Shown: piece after piece, positions 57-40,654 of the stretch
Layout: every line of letters starts with the position of its first letter
How positions within the stretch are numbered: position 1 is the stretch's first letter
Virus record (IMG/VR): IMGVR_UViG_3300023184_004198
Coordinates: 1-64,000 of that record
DNA length: 64,000 bases
Reading direction: 5' to 3' (one strand)
Translations under genes and position numbers: made by a program
Notes under the pieces: generated by a model
Told to the model about the DNA's origin: nothing
What the model saw: the letters and a program-made list of their open reading frames with translations, nothing else
Database searches by the model: none

Positions 57-1253
57 ATGTCACAAGAACTATTAGAAAGTCGTTGGGGCGAAACCAAAGA
101 GGCACTGTTAGAAGGTCTTAATGGAACCAAACGCAATAGCATGAATGTTATCCTCGAAAACACTCGTCGCTATTTGAAAGAGAATGCAACAGCAGGTAGT
201 ACTGCTGCTGGCAACATTGCAACACTTAACCGTGTTATTCTGCCAGTGATCCGTCGTGTTATGCCCACCGTTATTGCTAACGAGTTGGTTGGCGTTCAGC
301 CCATGACAGGTCCAGTTGGTCAAATCCACACCCTGCGTGTGCGTTATGCCAACAGCTTGACAGATACTTCCGCAGCCGCTACTTCTGTATCAGCTGGTGA
401 AGAAGCATTGAGCCCATTCAAAATTGCTCAAGCATACTCTACCGTTCCTAGCGGTACAAACACTGCTACCAACTACACTGGCGGCAACACAGCCACCATG
501 GAAGGTACTGGCGGTAAGCAAATCAGCGTTCAAATCCTGAAGCAAGCCGTTGAAGCTCGCACACGTAAGTTGCAAGCACGCTGGACATTTGAATCTGCAC
601 AAGACGCACAAGCCATGCATGGTATTGACGTTGAAGCAGAAATCATGGCAGCATTGGCTCAAGAGATTACCGCTGAGATCGACCAAGAGATTCTCTTGTC
701 ATTGCGCTCATTGGCCGCTACTGAGTTCACATACAACCAAGCTACCGTTTCTGGTACAGCAACATTCGTTGGTGACGAACACGCCGCTTTGGCTGTGTTG
801 GTTAACCGTGTTGCTAACTTGATTGCTCAACGCACACGTCGTGGCGCTGGTAACTACGCTGTGGTTTCTTCTGCTGCTTTGACAGTGTTGCAAAGTGCAA
901 CAACTTCTGCTTTTGCTCGCACCACAGAAGGTACATTTGAAGCACCTACCAACACCAAGTTTGTTGGTACATTGAACGGCTCTATGCGTGTGTTTGTCGA
1001 CAGTTATGCTGCTGACACACAAAGCGTATTGGTCGGTTACAAAGGTTCTTCAGAAGCAGACGCACCAGCATTCTACTGCCCATACATCCCATTGATGTCT
1101 TCAGGCGTTGTGTTGGATCCAAGCACATTCGAACCAGTGGTGTCATTCATGACACGTTATGGTTACATCGAATTGACCAACACTGCATCTAGCTTCGGCA
1201 ACGCTGGTGACTACGTTGGTGAGATCGCTGTGTCTAACCTTTCATTCTCCTAA
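57..1253 (+). CDS. gp23: Major capsid protein, T4 gp23-like
   Basis: 398 aa with gp23 motifs VGVQPMTGPVGQIHTLR, RKLQARWTFE, AEITAEIDQEIL, FYCPYIPL and FMTRYG. Possible prohead protease site YLKE/NATAG. Confidence 0.95.
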   Translation: MSQELLESRWGETKEALLEGLNGTKRNSMNVILENTRRYLKENATAGSTAAGNIATLNRVILPVIRRVMPTVIANELVGVQPMTGPVGQIHTLRVRYANSLTDTSAAATSVSAGEEALSPFKIAQAYSTVPSGTNTATNYTGGNTATMEGTGGKQISVQILKQAVEARTRKLQARWTFESAQDAQAMHGIDVEAEIMAALAQEITAEIDQEILLSLRSLAATEFTYNQATVSGTATFVGDEHAALAVLVNRVANLIAQRTRRGAGNYAVVSSAALTVLQSATTSAFARTTEGTFEAPTNTKFVGTLNGSMRVFVDSYAADTQSVLVGYKGSSEADAPAFYCPYIPLMSSGVVLDPSTFEPVVSFMTRYGYIELTNTASSFGNAGDYVGEIAVSNLSFS

Positions 1254-32155: not shown

Positions 32156-32764
32156 ATGAAAAATTTTGCCCATTACCTCGCCGAAAGCGAACGTACATAC
32201 AACTATCGTATCAAAATACTGGGCAAACCGTCCGGTGATTTGGTATCGCAGTTGAAGAAAAAGTTGGATCAATTTGATCCTGTTAAAATGAGTGATCCTC
32301 GTACCACTCCTATACAGATCATTCCCACTGACTTTCCCAACAACAAAAATGACTCAGTAACAATGTTTGACGTGAGTTTCAAGTATCCAGCCATTGAACC
32401 ACAGATCAAACAACTAGCACAGTTGCTGGGACTTGACCCCAATCACATCATCATGCAGACCACACCACACGTGGATGGCCTGGTAGATGAGTATGAAAAA
32501 ATTGATGCTGAAAACAAAGACTTGTTGGGTGACACAGACTATCCTGCTCCTGACGCAGAACAAAAGGCATTGAAGAAAGACTACTCAACTGGTCCTTATG
32601 ATCATGCTGTGTTGAAAAATGCGTACCGTTCAGATTTCACCGTGGCTGGCGGCAAAACACCCGCAGCCAAAACCACAAATGATATTCCAACGGGCAATAA
32701 AAGCCCAATGAGCAAGATCACTCGTCCACCCAAGCCAGCCACTGGCGCTAACCCAAGAGGATAA
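32156..32764 (+). CDS. Probable head-associated protein with CTS-like N-terminus
   Basis: TAAATA at 32133-38 and SD AGGA put the start at MKNFAHYLAE. Confidence 0.55.
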   Translation: MKNFAHYLAESERTYNYRIKILGKPSGDLVSQLKKKLDQFDPVKMSDPRTTPIQIIPTDFPNNKNDSVTMFDVSFKYPAIEPQIKQLAQLLGLDPNHIIMQTTPHVDGLVDEYEKIDAENKDLLGDTDYPAPDAEQKALKKDYSTGPYDHAVLKNAYRSDFTVAGGKTPAAKTTNDIPTGNKSPMSKITRPPKPATGANPRG

Positions 32765-32769
32765 TACAA

Positions 32770-35700
32770 ATGAGTTTCTTTTACGATTTAAACAAAAAAC
32801 TAGACGCCATCCGCCAAACACCAAGCAAGACACATGGTCAATTGAATGAGCGTGATATGGGCAAACACAACAATGCCACCACAGGGTTCAAAGCATTGGC
32901 TGACAAAGCCGGCAAAGAATACGGCAGCAAGGCTGCTGGTGAGCGTGTGGCTGGTGCTGTCAAAGCCAAGATGGCCAAGGCCGGCAAACTAGAAGAAGAA
33001 GAAGGCATGAGCCGTGCTGCCAAAGGTTATGAAAAGTACGGCAAAAAAGGTATGGAAGCGTTGGCCAAAGCCGGACGTGAAGGCAAAGCACTAGACCCTG
33101 TTAGAAAAAAATACGACAAGTATGACAATAAAGAAGTGTCTGAAGACTTTGGTCCAGGTACTGCAGGTCGTAACAGAAATCAAGCAGGCCCAGAGTATTC
33201 CTTCAGCCCAGATACTAAAAACTATAAGACTCCAAATCTTGATAGAAATACTGAAATAGACCGAAAAGGATATGTGACAGATTGGAACAAAGAGATTGTC
33301 AACACAACAATGGGTCCGGATACTCGCGGTAACCAAGCACACATTGGTGCATATACGTCTGATGGTCAAGGTCAAACCAAATATGTAGACAGAACAACAC
33401 CTGGTGTTATCAACAAAATCAAAGACAAACTGGGTTGGGACATGCCTGATCCAGCATATGGTCCAAGACCAGACGAAACACAACGTTTAGCCAAACGTTA
33501 TCCCAAGCCAACACAAGAAAGTGGTGGGCCTGCTCCTGCAAAATCAATGGTTGACAAGCAAGCATCCACAGCAGGACGTACTCCGCCATATGTGCCTCCC
33601 AAGGCCAGCAAGCCAGCCCCCAAGGACAACGGCATGGGTCGTATTGTGCAAGGTACATGGCAAGCAGACCCCAAAGGAACAGTTAAAGCACCTAGTGGTG
33701 ATCCTGAAGGCGTACCAGAATCTAGTGCTCCAATGACACCCAAACAAAAGTCATTTGCCAAGCTGGCACCACCTGCAGACAAAATCACTTTTGCTGACAA
33801 GATTGCTGGCGCCAAAAAAGAAGTTGACGAAATGCTGGGCGATGTGGCTGCTGAGGCAATGAGAGCCGCGCTGGGCAAAGGCAAGCAAACTGTTCAAGGC
33901 ATGGCCGAAGATCAACCCACACATTTTGAAGTGCATTACAAAGACAATCAAAAAGGCCGTACAGCAAAAACCAAAGTCAAAGGGTCTGATGCCAAACAAG
34001 CAAAAGCAGCTTGGAATGACTGGAACAGCAGCAACACACCAGGCCGTTTTACTTTTGTGGCAGTAAAACCTGTGGCCGCTGAGATGGACGAAGGCAATGC
34101 ATTTGACTACAAGTCACCAAGAGATGCTGCACCCAAGGTTGGTAGTGTTGAACGTGGCCACAAGCACGACATTGAGCACACAGCCACAGGTCGTAAAGTC
34201 ACACGCCGTGTGGATGACCAAGGTCATTCAGTTGGTGCCGACGACGAAACAGATACACAACAAGGACCACGTGGACGTGGACGTCCAAAAGGCACTAAAG
34301 GTGCTATTGGTGCCAAAGGCCCGTCAGGTCGTTCTAAGTTGATGACCAAAGAAGGCGATCAAGACATCACTGACCAAGGTGAATACGATCAAGAAGGCGA
34401 CATGGCCAAAGACGACATCAAGACCATTGTGCGTCATGCACAGGCCTTGAGCCGAGTATTAGGCGACAACGACAACTTGCCAGAATGGGTACAATCAAAA
34501 CTGGCCAAGATTGAAGGCATGATGATCAGCATTGACGAGTACATGCAGAATCAAGCCAGCGATGATAGTGAAGAAGAACCCATTGCTGAAAAAGCAGTGA
34601 GCAAGAAACAACAACGTTTCATGGGCATGGTTCACGCAGCACAAAAAGGTGAAAAGCCTGCCAGCAAAGAAGTTGGCAAAGTGGCCAAAACCATGAAGAA
34701 AAAAGATGCTGAAGATTTTGCCAGCACCAAGCACAAAGGCTTGCCTGAAAAAGTCAAGAGCAAAAAGAAAGAAGAAGTTGATGAAAACTCTGAAGAAGGC
34801 AGATTGATTACTAAACAAACTGGTCCAGGACAGACTTCAACTAGTTCAACCACTGGCCGAGTCAGTGCCACAATGGACAAAGGCCAAGTCACTGTTAAAC
34901 CAGCCAAGTCTGGCGGCGTCAGTTACGGCAAAGGCATTTACGACTCAATGAATCGTGAATTAGAACTGATGATTGCTGAATCAATGAGCGTGAACATGAG
35001 CGACTCAACAGAAGGCAACAAGAGTCTGACTGTTACAGCCACAGATGACGATGCAATGAAACTGGCTATGATACTTAAATCAGCAGGCCTTGGTGGCGGC
35101 GACGCACACTCACACGGCGAAGAAGCATGTGATACCTGCGGCATGACAGATTGTGGTTGCGGTGATGTACAAGAAGCGGTGGATGAAAATGCTCCTGATT
35201 GGCCCACCAACACTGAACAGGCTGACAGCAACTTTGGTTATGCTGGTGGATTGAACAAGCCCAAAGCAGACATTGCTGGCGATGGACAATCAACTGTGCC
35301 TGTTGTGGCTACCCGTCCACACAATGATGATCTACGCAGAATCAGAGAAATGGCTGGGATCAAAAATGAAGAACACATTGATCTAGGACCAACATCTCCT
35401 GAAGTTGCTGCCATGTCAAAAGACGAAGTTGATGCTGCATTGAGATTAGGAATGAGCCCAGATATTTCTGGCATGGATCCCGACGAAGTAAATGCACAAT
35501 TTGGCGATAGCAACGATACCCAGTACGAAGACAGCATTCAACGCATGCGTGAAATGGCCGGTATCAAAGAATGGGAAGTTAAACTAGACTCACCACCAAG
35601 AACTGGTGCTTATCCACACGAACTGTATGGCAAAGATAGAGAGAGATATGATGCTGTACAAACAGGATCTGGCCCAGAAAGTCAGAAAGTGCAACAATAC

Positions 35701-36222
35701 TATCAGAATAAAAACGCAGGCAGTTATGATTCTGGACAAAAATACACCGACGAACGTGATGCAGATTACGCAGATAGATTAAATGCTGCACGTGCAGGAA
35801 GAATAGCCAACAATGAATTAACACCTGGTGAATGGATACAAAAAGGAACAAATGCTGTAAGAAAAGCATTTGGCGGACAAGATAAACCACTACAGCCGGC
35901 TAAGACAGTGGTAGACCTTGATGGCCCATCAAACTATCCAAGCGCGAGATATGTTGGCAGTGATGACGCAAATATAAAACGTTACTTAGATCCAAAGGCT
36001 GATGCAGCGTATAAAGCAAGACAAAAGGCATTGTTCCCAGACGATTTTAAAGAAGGAAAGGGCGACGGCAACTTAGCCAACAACGCTAAACCATATGACA
36101 AAGTCACACAGGGTGATGTTATTGCTGGACGTCTTGGCAAAGACGAAAAAGGCGGCAAAGAAAAACAAGTTGAAGAAAGCATTTTTGCTCTCACCAACCA
36201 ATGGAAAGCATACAAGGGGTAA
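32770..36222 (+). CDS. Modular capsid-internal protein (1150 aa) containing a DUF3008-like module
   Basis: Charged, low-structure modules separated by hydrophobic-x-Glu sites. Includes KAVSKKQQRFMGMVHAAQKG...KHKGLPEK (DUF3008-like) and two REMAGIK motifs. Confidence 0.55.
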   Translation: MSFFYDLNKKLDAIRQTPSKTHGQLNERDMGKHNNATTGFKALADKAGKEYGSKAAGERVAGAVKAKMAKAGKLEEEEGMSRAAKGYEKYGKKGMEALAKAGREGKALDPVRKKYDKYDNKEVSEDFGPGTAGRNRNQAGPEYSFSPDTKNYKTPNLDRNTEIDRKGYVTDWNKEIVNTTMGPDTRGNQAHIGAYTSDGQGQTKYVDRTTPGVINKIKDKLGWDMPDPAYGPRPDETQRLAKRYPKPTQESGGPAPAKSMVDKQASTAGRTPPYVPPKASKPAPKDNGMGRIVQGTWQADPKGTVKAPSGDPEGVPESSAPMTPKQKSFAKLAPPADKITFADKIAGAKKEVDEMLGDVAAEAMRAALGKGKQTVQGMAEDQPTHFEVHYKDNQKGRTAKTKVKGSDAKQAKAAWNDWNSSNTPGRFTFVAVKPVAAEMDEGNAFDYKSPRDAAPKVGSVERGHKHDIEHTATGRKVTRRVDDQGHSVGADDETDTQQGPRGRGRPKGTKGAIGAKGPSGRSKLMTKEGDQDITDQGEYDQEGDMAKDDIKTIVRHAQALSRVLGDNDNLPEWVQSKLAKIEGMMISIDEYMQNQASDDSEEEPIAEKAVSKKQQRFMGMVHAAQKGEKPASKEVGKVAKTMKKKDAEDFASTKHKGLPEKVKSKKKEEVDENSEEGRLITKQTGPGQTSTSSTTGRVSATMDKGQVTVKPAKSGGVSYGKGIYDSMNRELELMIAESMSVNMSDSTEGNKSLTVTATDDDAMKLAMILKSAGLGGGDAHSHGEEACDTCGMTDCGCGDVQEAVDENAPDWPTNTEQADSNFGYAGGLNKPKADIAGDGQSTVPVVATRPHNDDLRRIREMAGIKNEEHIDLGPTSPEVAAMSKDEVDAALRLGMSPDISGMDPDEVNAQFGDSNDTQYEDSIQRMREMAGIKEWEVKLDSPPRTGAYPHELYGKDRERYDAVQTGSGPESQKVQQYYQNKNAGSYDSGQKYTDERDADYADRLNAARAGRIANNELTPGEWIQKGTNAVRKAFGGQDKPLQPAKTVVDLDGPSNYPSARYVGSDDANIKRYLDPKADAAYKARQKALFPDDFKEGKGDGNLANNAKPYDKVTQGDVIAGRLGKDEKGGKEKQVEESIFALTNQWKAYKG

Positions 36223-36762: not shown

Positions 36763-37134
36763 ATGAGAGCACAAGAGTTCGTCACTGAAGACAAAGTTGG
36801 TAAAATCAGCAGACGACTTGACACGGCCACAGTGGGCCTGCACAAGTTTCGTGACATGCAATTTGCTGACCGCGTGTATGAACTCAATCGTATCATGATG
36901 GCCGTGGCTTCAACTGACGGCACTTTTGTGCCCGACCTAGATGGCGAATCCTGGGCCGGGCGCAACAACATTGCCGCACCGTACACTCCTGAAGAACAAG
37001 ACATGCTGAAAATGGCCTACAAGGCCATTGGCAGCCACCATGAAGATTTGAATCACGGTGACTTGCGCAGTCAAGAACATCCTGCGGTGAACACCACTAG
37101 TCCTGTGTCAGCGTTCAAAGGCTACCCACGATGA
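36763..37134 (+). CDS. Probable internal head protein with CTS-like N-terminus (paralog A)
   Basis: Starts MRAQEFVTE and ends SPVSAFKGYPR. Confidence 0.55.
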   Translation: MRAQEFVTEDKVGKISRRLDTATVGLHKFRDMQFADRVYELNRIMMAVASTDGTFVPDLDGESWAGRNNIAAPYTPEEQDMLKMAYKAIGSHHEDLNHGDLRSQEHPAVNTTSPVSAFKGYPR

Positions 37135-37631
37135 GCATGCATTCTGCAGCCGAAGTTGATGCTCATATCAAATCTTGGATAGAGCATGTCAGCCAGCCAC
37201 AGGAAAAATTAGACAACTTGCCCGTGTGTCCTTTTGCTAAAAAAGTAGAATATAAACTAATTGACACAAACTTAGATCAATTGGGTATGCCAAACCATGA
37301 TTTGAAATTGATAATTTATATTTTACCTGATGAAGTTTCTGAACAGCAAATGGCCGATCGTTGTTTAGCATTGAACAAGCAATACCCAGATTATGTGTTT
37401 TTACCAGACCACAAAAACAAGCGCACTTATATCAATAATATATTGACCAACAACTGCAAATATAATTTGGTCATGTGCCAACCTAAAGAAGAAATTGAAA
37501 AAAGCAGAGAAAGTCTGTTAAAAACAAATTATTACACATTTTTCAATAACAAATATTGGAATCAAGAGTGTGTATATGAATCCATTGTGCCTAACAACCA
37601 CTGGAGCAAAACAGTGGAGCCAGCCACATGA
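37131..37631 (+). CDS. Hypothetical protein, DUF1415-like CPFA motif
   Basis: WIEHVSQP...LPVCPFAKK; visibly more AT-rich than its neighbours. Confidence 0.5.
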   Translation: MSMHSAAEVDAHIKSWIEHVSQPQEKLDNLPVCPFAKKVEYKLIDTNLDQLGMPNHDLKLIIYILPDEVSEQQMADRCLALNKQYPDYVFLPDHKNKRTYINNILTNNCKYNLVMCQPKEEIEKSRESLLKTNYYTFFNNKYWNQECVYESIVPNNHWSKTVEPAT

Positions 37632-38014
37632 GAGCACGAGAGTTTATCACAGAACAAGCAACGCTGCCTCCTGAGCAAGCAGATCCCATGAATCATGTGT
37701 TTGTGTTGCCTGGAGTAAAATCCAGTGATCCATATCAAATCTATCGACTGGGTGTGGCCATGGCCCGTGCCAGAAGTGATGCTGGCTCAGATGGCATTGC
37801 CGACAACTTTCCAGCCTGGTCTCCTCAAGCTGCATTTGGAGAAGAAGCAGTAGTTGGTGGGTTTAACGCCACTATTGAACCCATAATTGATCAGGCATTG
37901 AAAATGGCCGGCTTGCCTGACAAAAAAATACAAATCAGCACACCCAACAGCCTGGAACCTGCGTCTGTTCAGAAACAAAGCCCTGTGCGGCCATTCGCTG
38001 GCTACCCCCGTTAA
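37628..38014 (+). CDS. Probable internal head protein with CTS-like N-terminus (paralog B)
   Basis: Starts MRAREFITE and ends SPVRPFAGYPR. Confidence 0.55.
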   Translation: MRAREFITEQATLPPEQADPMNHVFVLPGVKSSDPYQIYRLGVAMARARSDAGSDGIADNFPAWSPQAAFGEEAVVGGFNATIEPIIDQALKMAGLPDKKIQISTPNSLEPASVQKQSPVRPFAGYPR

Positions 38015-38073: not shown

Positions 38074-38679
38074 ATGGCCAACCCGCCTCCACCATACGAC
38101 AACATCACAGGCATTAGCCGTGCTGTGATGAAAGACACCGCACAGATTACTGTGCAAAATTATAATGGCGTTGCTCGTCCTGGCGAACTTGTAGTTGATC
38201 AAATTACTGACAATCTTTATGTGGGCAACATCAATGGTAACTTGACCCTGGTGGGATTTGGGTCAGGATTATCAACTCCCACTGCATTTAATCCACAGTT
38301 TACAGACGCATCAGGTACCACTGCTGGTACCACAGTGACTGGTGCCTACACCTTGATTGGCCCGCTGTGTTATTTTAGAGTTTACGCAGACTTCAGCACC
38401 ACCACCAACTTTGGCACCCTAGGTTATCAAATCACATTGCCATTTGCCAGTGTGCAAACCATGCGCATTGCTGGAGGCACCTTGCATCAGGTGTCTGGAG
38501 CAGGTTCACCGGCCCTGTTTCACATTGCTGGTATCACAGACAACGCAGTCAGCACCACAGTTCACAAGTTGTATTATTCAGGCAGCACCACAGATCTGCC
38601 CTGGAAGTACAATACTCCAACATCCTGGGCACAACCTGACAGCCACTTTGACATCTCAGGCATTTACCAAATAGCCTAA
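38074..38679 (+). CDS. Short fibre/decoration-like protein
   Basis: PGELVVDQITDNLYVGN resembles fibre N-terminal (Mtd-N-like) motifs. TAAATA at 38049-38054. Confidence 0.45.
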   Translation: MANPPPPYDNITGISRAVMKDTAQITVQNYNGVARPGELVVDQITDNLYVGNINGNLTLVGFGSGLSTPTAFNPQFTDASGTTAGTTVTGAYTLIGPLCYFRVYADFSTTTNFGTLGYQITLPFASVQTMRIAGGTLHQVSGAGSPALFHIAGITDNAVSTTVHKLYYSGSTTDLPWKYNTPTSWAQPDSHFDISGIYQIA

Positions 38680-38692: not shown

Positions 38693-39499
38693 ATGAAAAA
38701 ACTTTTATTTGTGCTGTTGCTCACAGCCGTTAATCTAGCACAGGCCTGGGACCAAACAGCCCCACTTGACCCTGCTCGCTGTCAAACACACAATCCTTAT
38801 GGTTGGGCACAAACCTCAAAACCGGTCACAGCCATTTGCCGCAGAGCATACTTTGTGGCCTATGATGCGGCTGCAAAGATTCCCAACTATGTCACATACA
38901 CATTGACCCCACCCAATGCACTAGGATGCTGGCCAAGAACCAATGCGTTTGTGGCAGATGCAAGTGTGCCCAACGGACCAAGACCAGATGACTACGCTGG
39001 CACCGGCTACGACAAAGGCCATGCCGCTCCTGATGGCGACTTATCTTGGGACCAACAAGTGGAATATGAGTCATTCCTAATGACCAACATGTACCCACAA
39101 CTGGGTGGATTGAATCGTGGCATTTGGAAACTGTTGGAAACGTCAGTGCGTGGCTGGACTGTGCAACAAAATCAGGTGTATACAATCTATGTGGGTGCTG
39201 TGTATGACACTGCCACTGACAAAAAGATTGGCAACGGTGTTGTGGTGCCCACAGGTTTCTACAAGATTGTGATCAATCAAGCCACAGGTGCCATGGCTGG
39301 CTGGTATTTCCGACACGAAGGAGGACAAGGCAATGACTTGACCAAGGCTCGTGCTGCCGTCTCTGCTATTGAAAACAAAGCAGGTGTGAAGTTTGCTTAT
39401 CCTGCCAATGCACGCGAACTGCCCATTGGACAAGAATGGCCTGTGGACTTTGGTGCGTTGACCAATGCCAAACGCCAAAAATGCAAGAGCGCCGACTGA
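38693..39499 (+). CDS. DNA/RNA non-specific endonuclease (NucA/Endonuclease_NS) with signal peptide
   Basis: MKKLLFVLLLTAVNLAQA signal; YDKGHAAP...SFLMTNMYPQLGGLNRGIWKLLE...VVVPTGFYKIV. Confidence 0.9.
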   Translation: MKKLLFVLLLTAVNLAQAWDQTAPLDPARCQTHNPYGWAQTSKPVTAICRRAYFVAYDAAAKIPNYVTYTLTPPNALGCWPRTNAFVADASVPNGPRPDDYAGTGYDKGHAAPDGDLSWDQQVEYESFLMTNMYPQLGGLNRGIWKLLETSVRGWTVQQNQVYTIYVGAVYDTATDKKIGNGVVVPTGFYKIVINQATGAMAGWYFRHEGGQGNDLTKARAAVSAIENKAGVKFAYPANARELPIGQEWPVDFGALTNAKRQKCKSAD

Positions 39500-39514: not shown

Positions 39515-40654
39515 ATGAGCAACTTCTATTGTGCAGCCCCCTGGCGTGGTTTGCACATCAATCCCCGCGGTGATGTTAAAACTTGTTGTGCTGGCAACCC
39601 CAACATGTTGGGCAATCTCAATGGTCAAACAATAGAGCAAATACTCAACTCAGACTTGATGGCTGGTATACGCACCAGTTTGGCACAAGGACAAGCACAC
39701 GACTATTGTTCAAACTGTGTACGTGCAGAACGTTTTGGTGCAGACTCAGAACGTGCCTGGCACAACAATGTAAACCCTGATTTTGATTATAGCACAGCAG
39801 GCAAAGAATATCACTATCCTGTGATAGTGGATGTGCGTTGGAACACCACTTGCAATTTCAGTTGTAACTATTGTGATCCCAGTGCCAGTAGCAAATGGGC
39901 ACAACTAAAACAAGTACCATTCAAGTCAGGTACAAGACCATACTATGAACAAGTGTGTAACTTCTTGGAACAGTATCATGATCACATACATGAAGTTGCC
40001 TTGGTAGGTGGCGAACCATTATTGCTGCCTGAGAACGAACGTCTGTTAGATGTCATTCCAGAGTCTGCTATTGTTACACTGATCACAAACTTGAATGTGG
40101 ACTTGCAGAATAATCGAATATTCCGCAAACTGTCTGAACGCAACAGAGTAGGTTGGAGCATGAGCTTTGATAACATTGGTGAACGATTTGAATACGTGCG
40201 CTATGGCGGATCTTGGACCATGTTGCAAGAAAATTTAAAAGTCATAAAAAGTCTACACCGTGATCGAGGACACTGGGGCGGTGTGCATGCAGTGTACAAC
40301 ATCTACAATGCCACACGATTGTGTGAATTCAGACAATTTGTTGAGGACACCAATAACACAGTGCTGTGGCAAAACTTGTTTCAACCGGAATACCTTGATC
40401 CATTTTTGCATGGAGTGGATGTGGCTCAAGCAGCGGCTGCAGAGATACGTGAGTTATACGGCATGAACATTGCCACACCTGCAGAACGTGTTTTCTTTGA
40501 TCAAGCACTCAGCAAGTATGATTCTATAACTACTGTACAGCCCAAGATTACCGCACAGTTTAAAAGACACATACAAGCAATTGAAACACAATACCATCCC
40601 AGCACAGCAGGCGAGTTTGCAAGACTATGGCCGGAGATTGCACAATGCTTGTGA
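39515..40654 (+). CDS. Radical SAM protein with N-terminal twitch domain (#1)
   Basis: CAAPW...KTCC...CSNC at the N-terminus, then CNFSCNYC and GGEP. Confidence 0.9.
   Translation: MSNFYCAAPWRGLHINPRGDVKTCCAGNPNMLGNLNGQTIEQILNSDLMAGIRTSLAQGQAHDYCSNCVRAERFGADSERAWHNNVNPDFDYSTAGKEYHYPVIVDVRWNTTCNFSCNYCDPSASSKWAQLKQVPFKSGTRPYYEQVCNFLEQYHDHIHEVALVGGEPLLLPENERLLDVIPESAIVTLITNLNVDLQNNRIFRKLSERNRVGWSMSFDNIGERFEYVRYGGSWTMLQENLKVIKSLHRDRGHWGGVHAVYNIYNATRLCEFRQFVEDTNNTVLWQNLFQPEYLDPFLHGVDVAQAAAAEIRELYGMNIATPAERVFFDQALSKYDSITTVQPKITAQFKRHIQAIETQYHPSTAGEFARLWPEIAQCL

What the first reader, a model, noticed from the sequence alone, without database searches (positions are those of the whole stretch)
36763..38014. 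Paralogous pair with T4-like capsid-targeting sequences flanking a foreign-looking gene
Seen: MRAQEFVTE... and MRAREFITE... share internal similarity (RVYELNRIMMA vs QIYRLGVAMA) and C-termini (SPVSAFKGYPR vs SPVRPFAGYPR). MKNFAHYLAE at 32156 is similar. An AT-rich DUF1415-like gene lies between the pair. Established: T4 internal proteins use the CTS MKTYQEFIAE, cleaved after Glu. Inference: these are packaged and injected proteins, candidates for anti-defence factors.
Basis: partly seen in the sequence, partly recalled or inferred. Interest (0 to 1): 0.6.

Follow-up and report, generated by a model that had tools for sequence, protein, structure and literature searches.

The report
T4-like capsid address tag, jumbo phage
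Two neighbouring small genes of an uncultured giant phage start with the same nine-residue tag (MRAxEF[I/V]xE), which closely resembles the signal phage T4 uses to load proteins into its head, so it probably marks proteins that are packed into the capsid and trimmed there.

Summary
ORFs A (36763-37134) and B (37628-38014) are full-length paralogues (BLASTP E 5e-6). Both start with MRA[QR]EF[VI]TE and end with SPVxxFxGYPR. A low-GC gene X (37131-37631) lies between them.

The window is the start of a 212.6-kb fragment of an uncultured jumbo myovirus of the Rak2/PA5oct kind, with a T4 gp23-type capsid protein.

The tag is a conserved peptide, not a DNA element. It heads four genes in this genome and at least 16 unrelated protein families in IMG/VR: at least 120 loci, against 0 for the reversed pattern. 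Its codons vary synonymously.

Three results indicate that its last residues, [I/V]-x-E, are a T4 gp21-type protease site:
- Five of five complete relatives encode that protease.
- One tagged peptide family aligns with the capsid protein exactly at its predicted maturation site.
- Modules found free behind the tag recur inside long multidomain proteins, preceded by [LIVMF]-x-E in 35 of 47 cases (background 1.7%).

Packaging, cleavage and injection were not shown. A and B are conserved, syntenic and under purifying selection, unlike T4's variable internal proteins, so an anti-defence role has no support. X is a lineage-specific insertion. A DUF1415 link has only a weak lead.

Verdict: a new member of a known kind.

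The parts
36763..37134 (+). Gene A, 123 aa. It is the first member of the conserved tandem pair and probably an internal head protein. Function of the mature part is unknown.
   Evidence: ORF. Paralogue of B. 30-sequence family alignment A3. dN/dS 0.05-0.12. AF2 pLDDT 83.6 with no fold match.
36763..36789 (+). Tag of A: MRAQEFVTE. Predicted capsid-targeting propeptide, with predicted cleavage after Glu-9.
37069..37131 (+). Invariant S103-x-E105 followed by the basic 18-residue tail of A, ...SPVSAFKGYPR. Role unknown.
37131..37631 (+). Gene X, 166 aa, 33-35% GC, without the tag. It is inserted exactly between A and B. Family phrog_10325 / 'T4-LIKE GC 824'; function unknown.
37131..37135 (+). 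ATGAG at the left edge of the insertion; the same five bases recur at the right edge.
   Evidence: Alignment of the junctions.
37628..37632 (+). ATGAG at the right edge of the insertion (start of B).
37628..38014 (+). Gene B, 128 aa. Second member of the pair.
   Evidence: 1817 relatives, none named. Alignment A4. dN/dS 0.08-0.16.
37628..37654 (+). Tag of B: MRAREFITE.
37949..38011 (+). Invariant S108-x-E110 and the basic tail of B, ...SPVRPFAGYPR.
32156..32764 (+). 202-aa virion protein starting MKNFAHYLAE, a ten-residue N-terminus with T4 CTS spacing. Homologue of PA5oct structural protein gp202.
57..1253 (+). T4 gp23-type major capsid protein. Its N-terminal 42 residues carry LLE, LLE, ILE and LKE. 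The predicted maturation cut is after L40-K41-E42 (bases 174-182).

Best explanation
MRAxEF[I/V]xE is the capsid-targeting propeptide of an uncultured clade of T4-headed jumbo phages.

How it most likely works (inferred by analogy with T4): the tag is made as the first nine residues of a cargo protein and carries the protein into the scaffolding core of the assembling prohead. The gp21-type prohead protease then cuts after Glu-9 at its [I/V]-x-E motif and leaves the mature protein inside the head.

A and B are a conserved, translationally coupled paralogous pair of such cargo proteins. They are most likely permanent internal head components. X is an unrelated accessory gene without the tag that was inserted between them in one sub-lineage.

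Shown here:
- The tag is a peptide under selection.
- It is shared by unrelated proteins.
- It is confined to this phage clade.
- It ends in a motif that marks module boundaries in polyproteins and aligns with the predicted capsid-protein maturation site.

Inferred: targeting, cleavage, and what happens to A and B after infection.
For: 1. T4-type head. The capsid protein matches Pfam Gp23 at E = 2e-97 and is 65% identical to the PA5oct capsid protein. All five complete relatives that carry the tag encode Peptidase_S77. In cultured relatives the gene order is portal, small core proteins, protease, scaffold, capsid protein.

2. The tag resembles T4's CTS. T4 ipII and ipIII start MKTYQEFIAE, which shares QEFIxE with the tag. 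In T4, gp21 cuts after L/I-x-E; residues 8 and 10 of the CTS govern processing and residues 4 and 7 govern targeting (PMC9026906).

3. Peptide-level conservation on many bodies.
- Four genes in this genome carry the tag, and two to five in each relative, with 0 in reversed controls.
- IMG/VR holds at least 120 loci, against 0 for the reversed pattern. Their proteins fall into 16 unrelated clusters.
- Codons vary synonymously, for example GAG/GAA 64/62.
- 38 of 39 A/B genes found by body similarity alone, with starts outside the scan pattern, still read [MV]RAxEF[IVLF]xE.

4. Evidence for cleavage.
- The tag end FIKE|NASVGATSSGSVAT of a small basic peptide aligns with YLKE|NATAGSTAAGNIAT of the capsid protein (E = 1e-5). 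T4 gp23 carries LTE a few residues upstream of the homologous stretch.
- Modules found free behind the tag recur inside long ORFs, preceded at the equivalent position by [LIVMF]-x-E in 35 of 47 cases, against a background of 1.7%.
- These internal boundaries keep only the x-E motif. The tag keeps R2, A3, E5 and F6 as well, which implies a second function such as targeting.

5. All tagged proteins under 100 aa are strongly basic, pI 9.6-12.

6. A and B are real conserved genes. dN/dS is 0.05-0.16. They abut in 29 loci. In complete genomes they lie about 38 kb from the protease, as they lie 37 kb from the capsid gene in the window.
Against: - There is no experimental evidence. No cultured phage with the tag or with an A/B homologue was found, so no virion proteome or N-terminal sequence applies.
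- The protease gene itself is missing from the held contig, which starts at the capsid gene.
- The tag is one residue shorter than T4's CTS and has no equivalent of T4's Tyr-4.
- A and B are mildly acidic, not basic. They lie among tail and fibre genes, not head genes.
- The invariant S-x-E near their C-termini does not fit a T4-type site.
- A generic [LIVMF]-x-E near N-termini is not enriched genome-wide (16.1% against 15.8%). Only the specific tag carries information.
- The module-boundary cases are not all independent, because many are homologous.
Confidence: 0.7

Rival explanations
1. The tag is a capsid-targeting propeptide as above, but A and B are transient prohead-core or scaffold accessories like T4 gp67 and gp68. 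On this view they are degraded or expelled during maturation. They are neither kept in the head nor injected.
For: A and B are conserved and syntenic like core assembly genes. In T4 all core proteins carry short N-terminal [LI]-x-E propeptides. The A model is largely extended, as expected of a protein that lines another structure.
Against: A and B have few internal [LIV]-x-E sites, whereas scaffolds are full of them. Relatives already have gp67/68-like genes next to the protease. PA5oct-type relatives assemble heads without A or B.
Confidence: 0.2
2. A and B are injected anti-defence factors. They would be packed with the DNA and released into the host to block a defence system.
For: Analogy with T4 IPI* (PMC3012670). 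The same tag sits on a variable gene array next to a polyvalent protein with Amidoligase_2 and GNAT domains. Such polyvalent proteins are thought to be injected (PMC7824862).
Against: Strong purifying selection and wide conservation of A and B, unlike hypervariable internal proteins. No similarity to any known inhibitor or enzyme by Pfam, PHROGs, PDB, BFVD or ESM Atlas.
Confidence: 0.15
3. The tag is an address for something other than the prohead, for example a chaperone, a tail or baseplate assembly step, or a secretion route. On this view it is not cut by the head protease.
For: A and B lie between tail-associated genes and fibre-like genes. Cleavage was not observed.
Against: The tag end aligns with the capsid-protein maturation site and with [LIVMF]-x-E module boundaries. 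It resembles the T4 CTS closely. It is charged, not hydrophobic like a secretion signal.
Confidence: 0.08
4. The conserved 27 bases are a nucleic-acid element, such as a translation start region or a recombination site for shuffling cassettes, and the peptide is incidental.
For: Arg-2 is AGA in 95 of 126 cases. X was inserted exactly at the ATGAG of the tag. T4 CTS cassettes have been proposed to aid exchange of internal-protein genes (own knowledge).
Against: All four-fold and two-fold sites in the tag vary freely while the residues stay fixed. Nothing upstream is conserved beyond a ribosome-binding-like purine run.
Confidence: 0.03

Closest known systems
Capsid targeting sequence (CTS) of phage T4 internal proteins IPII/IPIII, MKTYQEFIAE
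   Same: - An N-terminal peptide directly after Met that ends in an aliphatic-x-Glu protease motif.
- Shares QEFIxE with the tag.
- Sits on unrelated cargo proteins of one phage.
- The phage has a gp23-type shell and, in relatives, a gp21-type protease.
   Different: - Nine residues, not ten, starting MRA instead of MKT, with no Tyr-4 equivalent.
- The cargo families are unrelated to IPI-III.
- The commonest cargo, A/B, is conserved rather than hypervariable.
- Function is inferred, not tested.
N-terminal propeptides of T4 prohead core proteins (gp22 MLKEQLIAE, gp67 MEGLIE, gp68 MLLIPE, gp21 MNEPQLLIE)
   Same: Short N-terminal stretches ending in [LI]-x-E and removed by gp21 (PMC9026906). The gp22 propeptide is also nine residues long.
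   Different: In T4 each core protein has its own sequence. Here one nearly invariant nonapeptide is reused on at least 16 families.
Processed head and ejection proteins of phiKZ-like giant phages (phiKZ, 201phi2-1, SPN3US)
   Same: Many head-internal proteins with propeptides cut after Glu by a distant gp21 homologue. These are giant phages with a large packaged proteome (PMC9026906).
   Different: Their motif is S/A-x-E, and no single shared N-terminal address peptide is known. It is a different phage lineage. The invariant S-x-E in the A/B tails is the only phiKZ-like feature here.
Polyvalent proteins of phages (Iyer et al. 2017, PMC5512222)
   Same: The neighbouring 1638-aa protein (Amidoligase_2, GNAT) is of this kind. 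It shares small basic modules with tagged stand-alone proteins.
   Different: A and B are small single-domain proteins. The observation that module boundaries carry prohead-protease-type sites was made here and was not taken from that work.

Membership tests
T4-type capsid targeting sequence / gp21-processed propeptide | Located at the extreme N-terminus, about 10 residues, directly after the start Met | tested here: met
   In 134 IMG/VR matches the median distance to the upstream in-frame stop is 8 codons, and 132 open an ORF of at least 50 aa. A, B, C and D of this genome behave the same way.
T4-type capsid targeting sequence / gp21-processed propeptide | Ends in the protease motif aliphatic-x-Glu (T4: L/I-x-E) | tested here: met
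   With that position left open, residue 7 is I or V in 18 of 18 starts. It is I, V, L or F in the 39 unselected A/B genes, and Glu-9 is kept in 38 of 39.
T4-type capsid targeting sequence / gp21-processed propeptide | Aromatic residues at the targeting positions (T4 residues 4 and 7) | tested here: inconclusive
   Phe-6 is invariant and aligns with T4 Phe-7. There is no counterpart of Tyr-4 in the nine-residue tag. The ten-residue MK.F..[YH]L.E of the 32156 protein has both.
T4-type capsid targeting sequence / gp21-processed propeptide | The same signal on several unrelated cargo proteins | tested here: met
   Four genes in this genome and 16 clusters of bodies in IMG/VR.
T4-type capsid targeting sequence / gp21-processed propeptide | The phage has the gp21-type prohead protease and a gp23-type shell | tested here: inconclusive
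   The shell protein is present. The protease is absent from the held 61%-complete contig, which begins at the capsid gene. It is present in 5 of 5 complete relatives that carry the tag.
T4-type capsid targeting sequence / gp21-processed propeptide | The protein is found in the head and is cut after the Glu | not testable with these tools
   No cultured member. Only indirect evidence exists: alignment with the capsid-protein cut site and module boundaries.
T4 internal proteins IPI/IPII/IPIII (sequence family) | Sequence similarity of the mature part | tested here: not met
   A profile of A/B finds nothing in the T4 genome. No Pfam or PHROG hit.
DUF1415 (PF07209), for gene X | Match to the Pfam model | tested here: not met
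   No hit at E <= 10. The only lead is a DUF1415-bearing viral cluster at rank 28, score 0.89. The AF2 model is poor (pLDDT 66.6) and has no fold match.

The most novel reading that the evidence does not exclude
MRAxEF[I/V]xE may be a clade-wide, portable address label. If so, the whole packaged and probably ejected proteome of an uncultured jumbo-phage clade could be read from sequence alone. The polyvalent proteins of these phages would then be polyproteins that the prohead protease cuts at [LIVMF]-x-E into the same small basic modules that also exist as free tagged genes. A and B would be a new, conserved internal head component with no counterpart in T4.
Probability: 0.45. Interest if true: 0.7.

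Novelty: new member of a known kind. Interest (0 to 1): 0.6.

Why it matters
- Which proteins giant phages carry into the cell with their DNA is mostly unknown, and unknown altogether for uncultured clades. A short sequence tag that marks such cargo would allow it to be listed directly from metagenomes.
- The tag shows that the T4 head-loading signal is much older and more widespread than the T-even phages.
- It suggests that large multidomain 'polyvalent' proteins are cut into modules inside the head.
- Because the core QEFIxE is shared with T4, the tag can be tested at once in the T4 packaging system.

Tried and rejected
- Nucleotide and protein searches of A, B, D and a 65-aa tagged protein against 50,697 cultured phage records found nothing.
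- A pattern search for CTS-like starts in PA5oct, Vibrio phage 2.275.O, Phosso and Serratia phage BF gave chance level only. A profile of A/B found nothing in those phages or in T4.
- Pfam and PHROGs gave nothing for A or B.
- The AF2 model of A was searched in PDB by Foldseek and by VIA-align wide, in BFVD and in the ESM Atlas. There was no match above noise.
- The AF2 model of X was of low confidence and had no match.
- The A-B complex prediction gave no verdict, and so gives no evidence either way.
- Promoter, terminator and T4 late-promoter scans around the genes were at chance level.
- The scan of bacterial and archaeal genomes gave 109 matches. By my own estimate about 70 are expected by chance. 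Only 6 are real tagged genes, all in MAG contigs that look like mis-binned phage, so this gives no host information.
- A generic [LIVMF]-x-E near N-termini is not enriched in the genome.
- The large profile search of protein representatives was not run. Its list of the 150 best hits would be filled by the roughly 1800 close relatives and it carries no names.
- The read and sequencing-run tools were not used.

Full report
WHAT IS THERE. The window is the first 64 kb of a 212,614-base IMG/VR virus contig that is estimated to be 61% complete. It belongs to a jumbo myovirus.
- The first gene (57-1253) is a T4 gp23-type major capsid protein: Pfam Gp23, E = 2e-97.
- Its closest cultured matches, at 62-66% identity, are Vibrio phage 2.275.O, Pseudomonas phage PA5oct and other phages of 285-470 kb.
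- Sheath, tube and head-closure genes follow.
- In cultured relatives the portal, small core proteins, prohead protease and scaffold lie directly upstream of the capsid gene. That part is cut off here, and accordingly no Peptidase_S77 is found in the contig.

THE OBSERVATION. ORF A (36763-37134, 123 aa) and ORF B (37628-38014, 128 aa) exist as described. They are full-length paralogues: BLASTP E = 5e-6, 25% identity.
- Both begin with MRA[QR]EF[VI]TE and end with SPVxxFxGYPR.
- Gene X (37131-37631, 166 aa) lies between them and overlaps both by ATGA. Its GC is 33-35%, against 45-53% for the flanks.
- Two more genes of the same genome begin with the tag: one at 204075 (274 aa, MRAQEFINE) and one at 204905 (213 aa, MRAREFIRE).
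- On a similarity score against RAREFITE these four score 30-39. The next N-terminus scores 18, and 1059 internal control positions reach at most 12.

THE TAG IS A PEPTIDE SIGNAL SHARED BY UNRELATED PROTEINS. The same pattern read backwards found none.
- Nearly all matches open an ORF: the median distance to the upstream stop is 8 codons, and 132 of 134 ORFs have at least 50 aa.
- After the tag is removed, the 124 proteins fall into 16 clusters with no mutual similarity. Eighty-three belong to the A/B superfamily. The others range from 53 to 544 aa.
- Synonymous sites in the tag vary freely: GCA/GCC/GCT/GCG, GAG/GAA 64/62, TTT/TTC, ATC/ATT/ATA. Nothing upstream is conserved except a ribosome-binding-like purine run.
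- As a check not biased by the pattern, I located 112 A/B genes by body similarity alone. Seventy-three match the scan pattern. Of the other 39, 38 still read [MV]RAxEF[IVLF]xE, with positions 4 and 8 free.
- In 596 Gb of bacterial and archaeal genomes the pattern occurs 109 times, against about 70 expected by chance on my own estimate. Only six of these are real tagged genes, and all six lie in MAG contigs that look like mis-binned phage.

LINK TO THE T4 HEAD SYSTEM. I took the T4 facts from the T4 record and from a review.
- ipII and ipIII both start ATGAAAACATATCAAGAATTTATTGCCGAA, which reads MKTYQEFIAE.
- gp21 cuts after L/I-x-E. The first ten residues of IPIII suffice for packaging. Residues 4 and 7 matter for targeting, and residues 8 and 10 for processing (PMC9026906).
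- The tag here shares QEFIxE with T4, including the Phe, the aliphatic residue and the Glu.
- T4's own core proteins all carry short N-terminal [LI]-x-E stretches: gp22 MLKEQLIAE, gp67 MEGLIE, gp68 MLLIPE, gp21 MNEPQLLIE.
- Five complete genomes of 340-372 kb that carry the tag all encode Peptidase_S77. Each has two to five tagged genes, with none in the reversed control.
- In each of them the A-B pair lies about 38 kb from the protease. In the window it lies 37 kb from the capsid gene. The pair is therefore syntenic.

EVIDENCE THAT THE TAG ENDS IN A PROTEASE SITE.
(a) The capsid protein has LLE, LLE, ILE and LKE within its first 42 residues, and then no [LIV]-x-E until residue 387. LKE-42 sits just before NATAGSTAAGNIA. 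T4 gp23 carries LTE-65 a few residues upstream of its NATNIAAGQTSGA stretch.
(b) A family of small basic tagged peptides aligns with the capsid protein across exactly this point: FIKE|NASVGATSSGSVAT against YLKE|NATAGSTAAGNIAT, E = 1e-5. This genome's own 72-aa version, MQVREIVES..., does the same.
(c) Modules that occur free behind the tag also occur inside long ORFs.
- NFADGK... stands behind MRAREFVIE in one contig and behind RVWE near the C-terminus of this genome's 1638-aa polyvalent protein (Amidoligase_2, GNAT).
- KWSxKYKSSINC... stands behind MRAREFITE in one contig and behind ELDE in this genome's 503-aa protein.
- Taken systematically, the long ORF has [LIVMF]-x-E at the position equivalent to tag residues 7-9 in 39 of 51 cases. 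That is 35 of 47 after removing four cases that are tagged genes with GTG starts. The background is 1.7%.
- Several of the failures have the motif shifted by one or two residues.
- At least eight different module families contribute, although many individual cases are homologous.
(d) Internal boundaries keep only the x-E motif. The N-terminal tag also keeps R2, A3, E5 and F6. This extra constraint argues for a second function that free proteins need and polyprotein modules do not. Targeting is the obvious candidate. This step is inference.

WHAT A AND B ARE. They belong to a large uncharacterised family. B alone has 1817 relatives at E <= 1e-3 in the 5.8-billion-protein collection. All are unnamed and none has a Pfam domain.
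- dN/dS against close relatives is 0.05-0.16.
- In 29 IMG/VR loci the two genes abut, with 365-383 bases from start to start.
- In 74 sequences S103, E105 and S113 are invariant, and Y39, R43, A47, A49, A85 and P114 nearly so.
- The mature parts are mildly acidic (pI 6.2 and 5.2) with a basic 18-residue tail.
- AF2 gives a confident but mostly extended model: pLDDT 83.6, pTM 0.53, three short helices and a floppy first ten residues. It matches nothing in PDB, BFVD or the ESM Atlas.
- Cultured relatives and T4 have no homologue.
- This conservation is unlike the hypervariable T4 internal proteins. I therefore consider a conserved internal head component more likely than an anti-defence factor.
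- The better analogue of the T4 internal-protein locus is the array at 201-205.5 kb of this genome. There, genes starting MRNYINLIE, MQQHEFTAE, MKYREILE, MIIDELFE, MRAQEFINE and MRAREFIRE follow the polyvalent protein.
- The equivalent array of a complete relative has a different set of bodies, starting MKIKDLILKE, MRSQEFIRE, MRAQEFITE, MRAQEFVTE, MKAQEFITR and MRWREIMEN.
- All tagged proteins shorter than 100 aa have pI 9.6-12. Strongly basic proteins would suit packing alongside DNA; this is my own reading and was not tested.

THE GENE IN BETWEEN. X is absent from 29 loci in which A's stop overlaps B's start. It is present in L106, L280 and L281, all close relatives of the window. It is therefore an insertion inherited within one sub-lineage.
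- The insert is bounded by ATGAG on both sides.
- X has no tag.
- It belongs to phrog_10325.
- Its cultured homologues, at 31-35% identity, are hypothetical proteins of T4-like cyanophages ('T4-LIKE GC 824').
- Distant paralogues at 22-27% identity lie near the head module of relatives.
- Pfam gives no DUF1415 hit even at E <= 10. A feature search lists a DUF1415-bearing cluster only at rank 28. The fold model is poor and unmatched.
- X is under purifying selection, dN/dS 0.11. Its function is unknown.

MKNFAHYLAE. The 202-aa protein at 32156 is the homologue of PA5oct gp202, which was found in virions by mass spectrometry.
- Its N-terminus is conserved in six genomes of the clade as MK.F..[YH]L.E. 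This has the T4 spacing: aromatic at 4, aromatic at 7, aliphatic at 8 and Glu at 10.
- The PA5oct protein starts MKSFRDYYDA and lacks the motif.
- It is the only such decapeptide in the genome.

COMPARISON AND NOVELTY. The closest known system is the T4 capsid targeting sequence, with gp21 processing. The tag meets the features that could be tested: position, terminal protease motif, reuse on unrelated cargo, and T4-type shell. The protease is present in the relatives. Packaging and cleavage could not be tested. The mature proteins are not members of any known family. I found no paper containing the strings MRAREF, MRAQEF or MRAHEF as a phage motif, and no mention of capsid targeting in a comparative review of jumbo phages. 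I file it as a new member of a known kind. Two points go beyond T4: one nearly invariant tag serves a very wide cargo set, and the same modules sit in polyvalent proteins behind protease-type sites.

LIMITS. Everything about function is comparative inference. The pattern fixes most tag positions, so only speak to natural variation. The module-boundary statistic counts homologous cases. The A-B complex prediction gave no verdict and is not used.

Noticed in passing
T4 record NC_000866, 18966-19130 (locus L159): T4 gp61.1, a 54-aa hypothetical protein next to the primase gene, starts MKTFKEFIKE. This is a decapeptide very like the T4 capsid targeting sequence.
   Followed up: no
Genome G000 201203-205546 (locus L161 6204-10547); relative G002, locus L165 4298-8600: An array of consecutive genes follows a polyvalent protein (1638 aa, Amidoligase_2 and GNAT). 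Their N-termini are the MRA tag or degenerate versions of it (MRNYINLIE, MQQHEFTAE, MKYREILE, MIIDELFE). The bodies differ between genomes, as in the T4 internal-protein locus.
   Followed up: partly
Genome G000 211651-211869 (L004 15652-15870); L031 11641-11838: Small basic peptides of 54-78 aa imitate, right after the tag, the first residues of the mature capsid protein: E|NASxGxTSSGxxAT. They may compete with or accompany the capsid protein N-arm.
   Followed up: partly
window 37069-37131 and 37949-38011: In 74 A/B sequences S-x-E and the following S-P are invariant, about 18 residues from the C-terminus. A basic tail SPVxxFKGYPR follows. S-x-E is the phiKZ-type cleavage motif, not the T4 type.
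   Followed up: no
window 38074-38679: This 201-aa ORF just after B is variable. It is absent in L106, L280, L281 and L072, and a 527-aa ORF takes its place in relative G002. The A-B neighbourhood is therefore a mosaic spot.
   Followed up: partly
window 38693-39499 and 39515-40654: A DNA/RNA non-specific endonuclease (Pfam Endonuclease_NS, E = 1e-37) with a signal-peptide-like N-terminus is followed by a protein with a CxxxCxxC radical-SAM-like motif. Both are conserved in relatives.
   Followed up: no
window 32770-36222: A 1150-aa low-complexity protein, homologue of a 499-aa PA5oct structural protein. It has a DUF3008-like segment at residues 609-662 directly preceded by I-A-E, and a repeated R[MI]REMAGIK motif. 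Its length varies strongly between relatives (588 aa in G002).
   Followed up: no
loci L177 and L208 (MAG labelled Haliscomenobacter sp., contigs of 183 and 148 kb): Contigs binned as a bacterial MAG carry the A-B pair. They are probably a jumbo phage of this clade binned with a bacterium, so this is a possible but unreliable hint to the host.
   Followed up: no
tag codon 2, all loci: Arg-2 of the tag is AGA in 95 of 126 cases, although the other codons vary synonymously.
   Followed up: no
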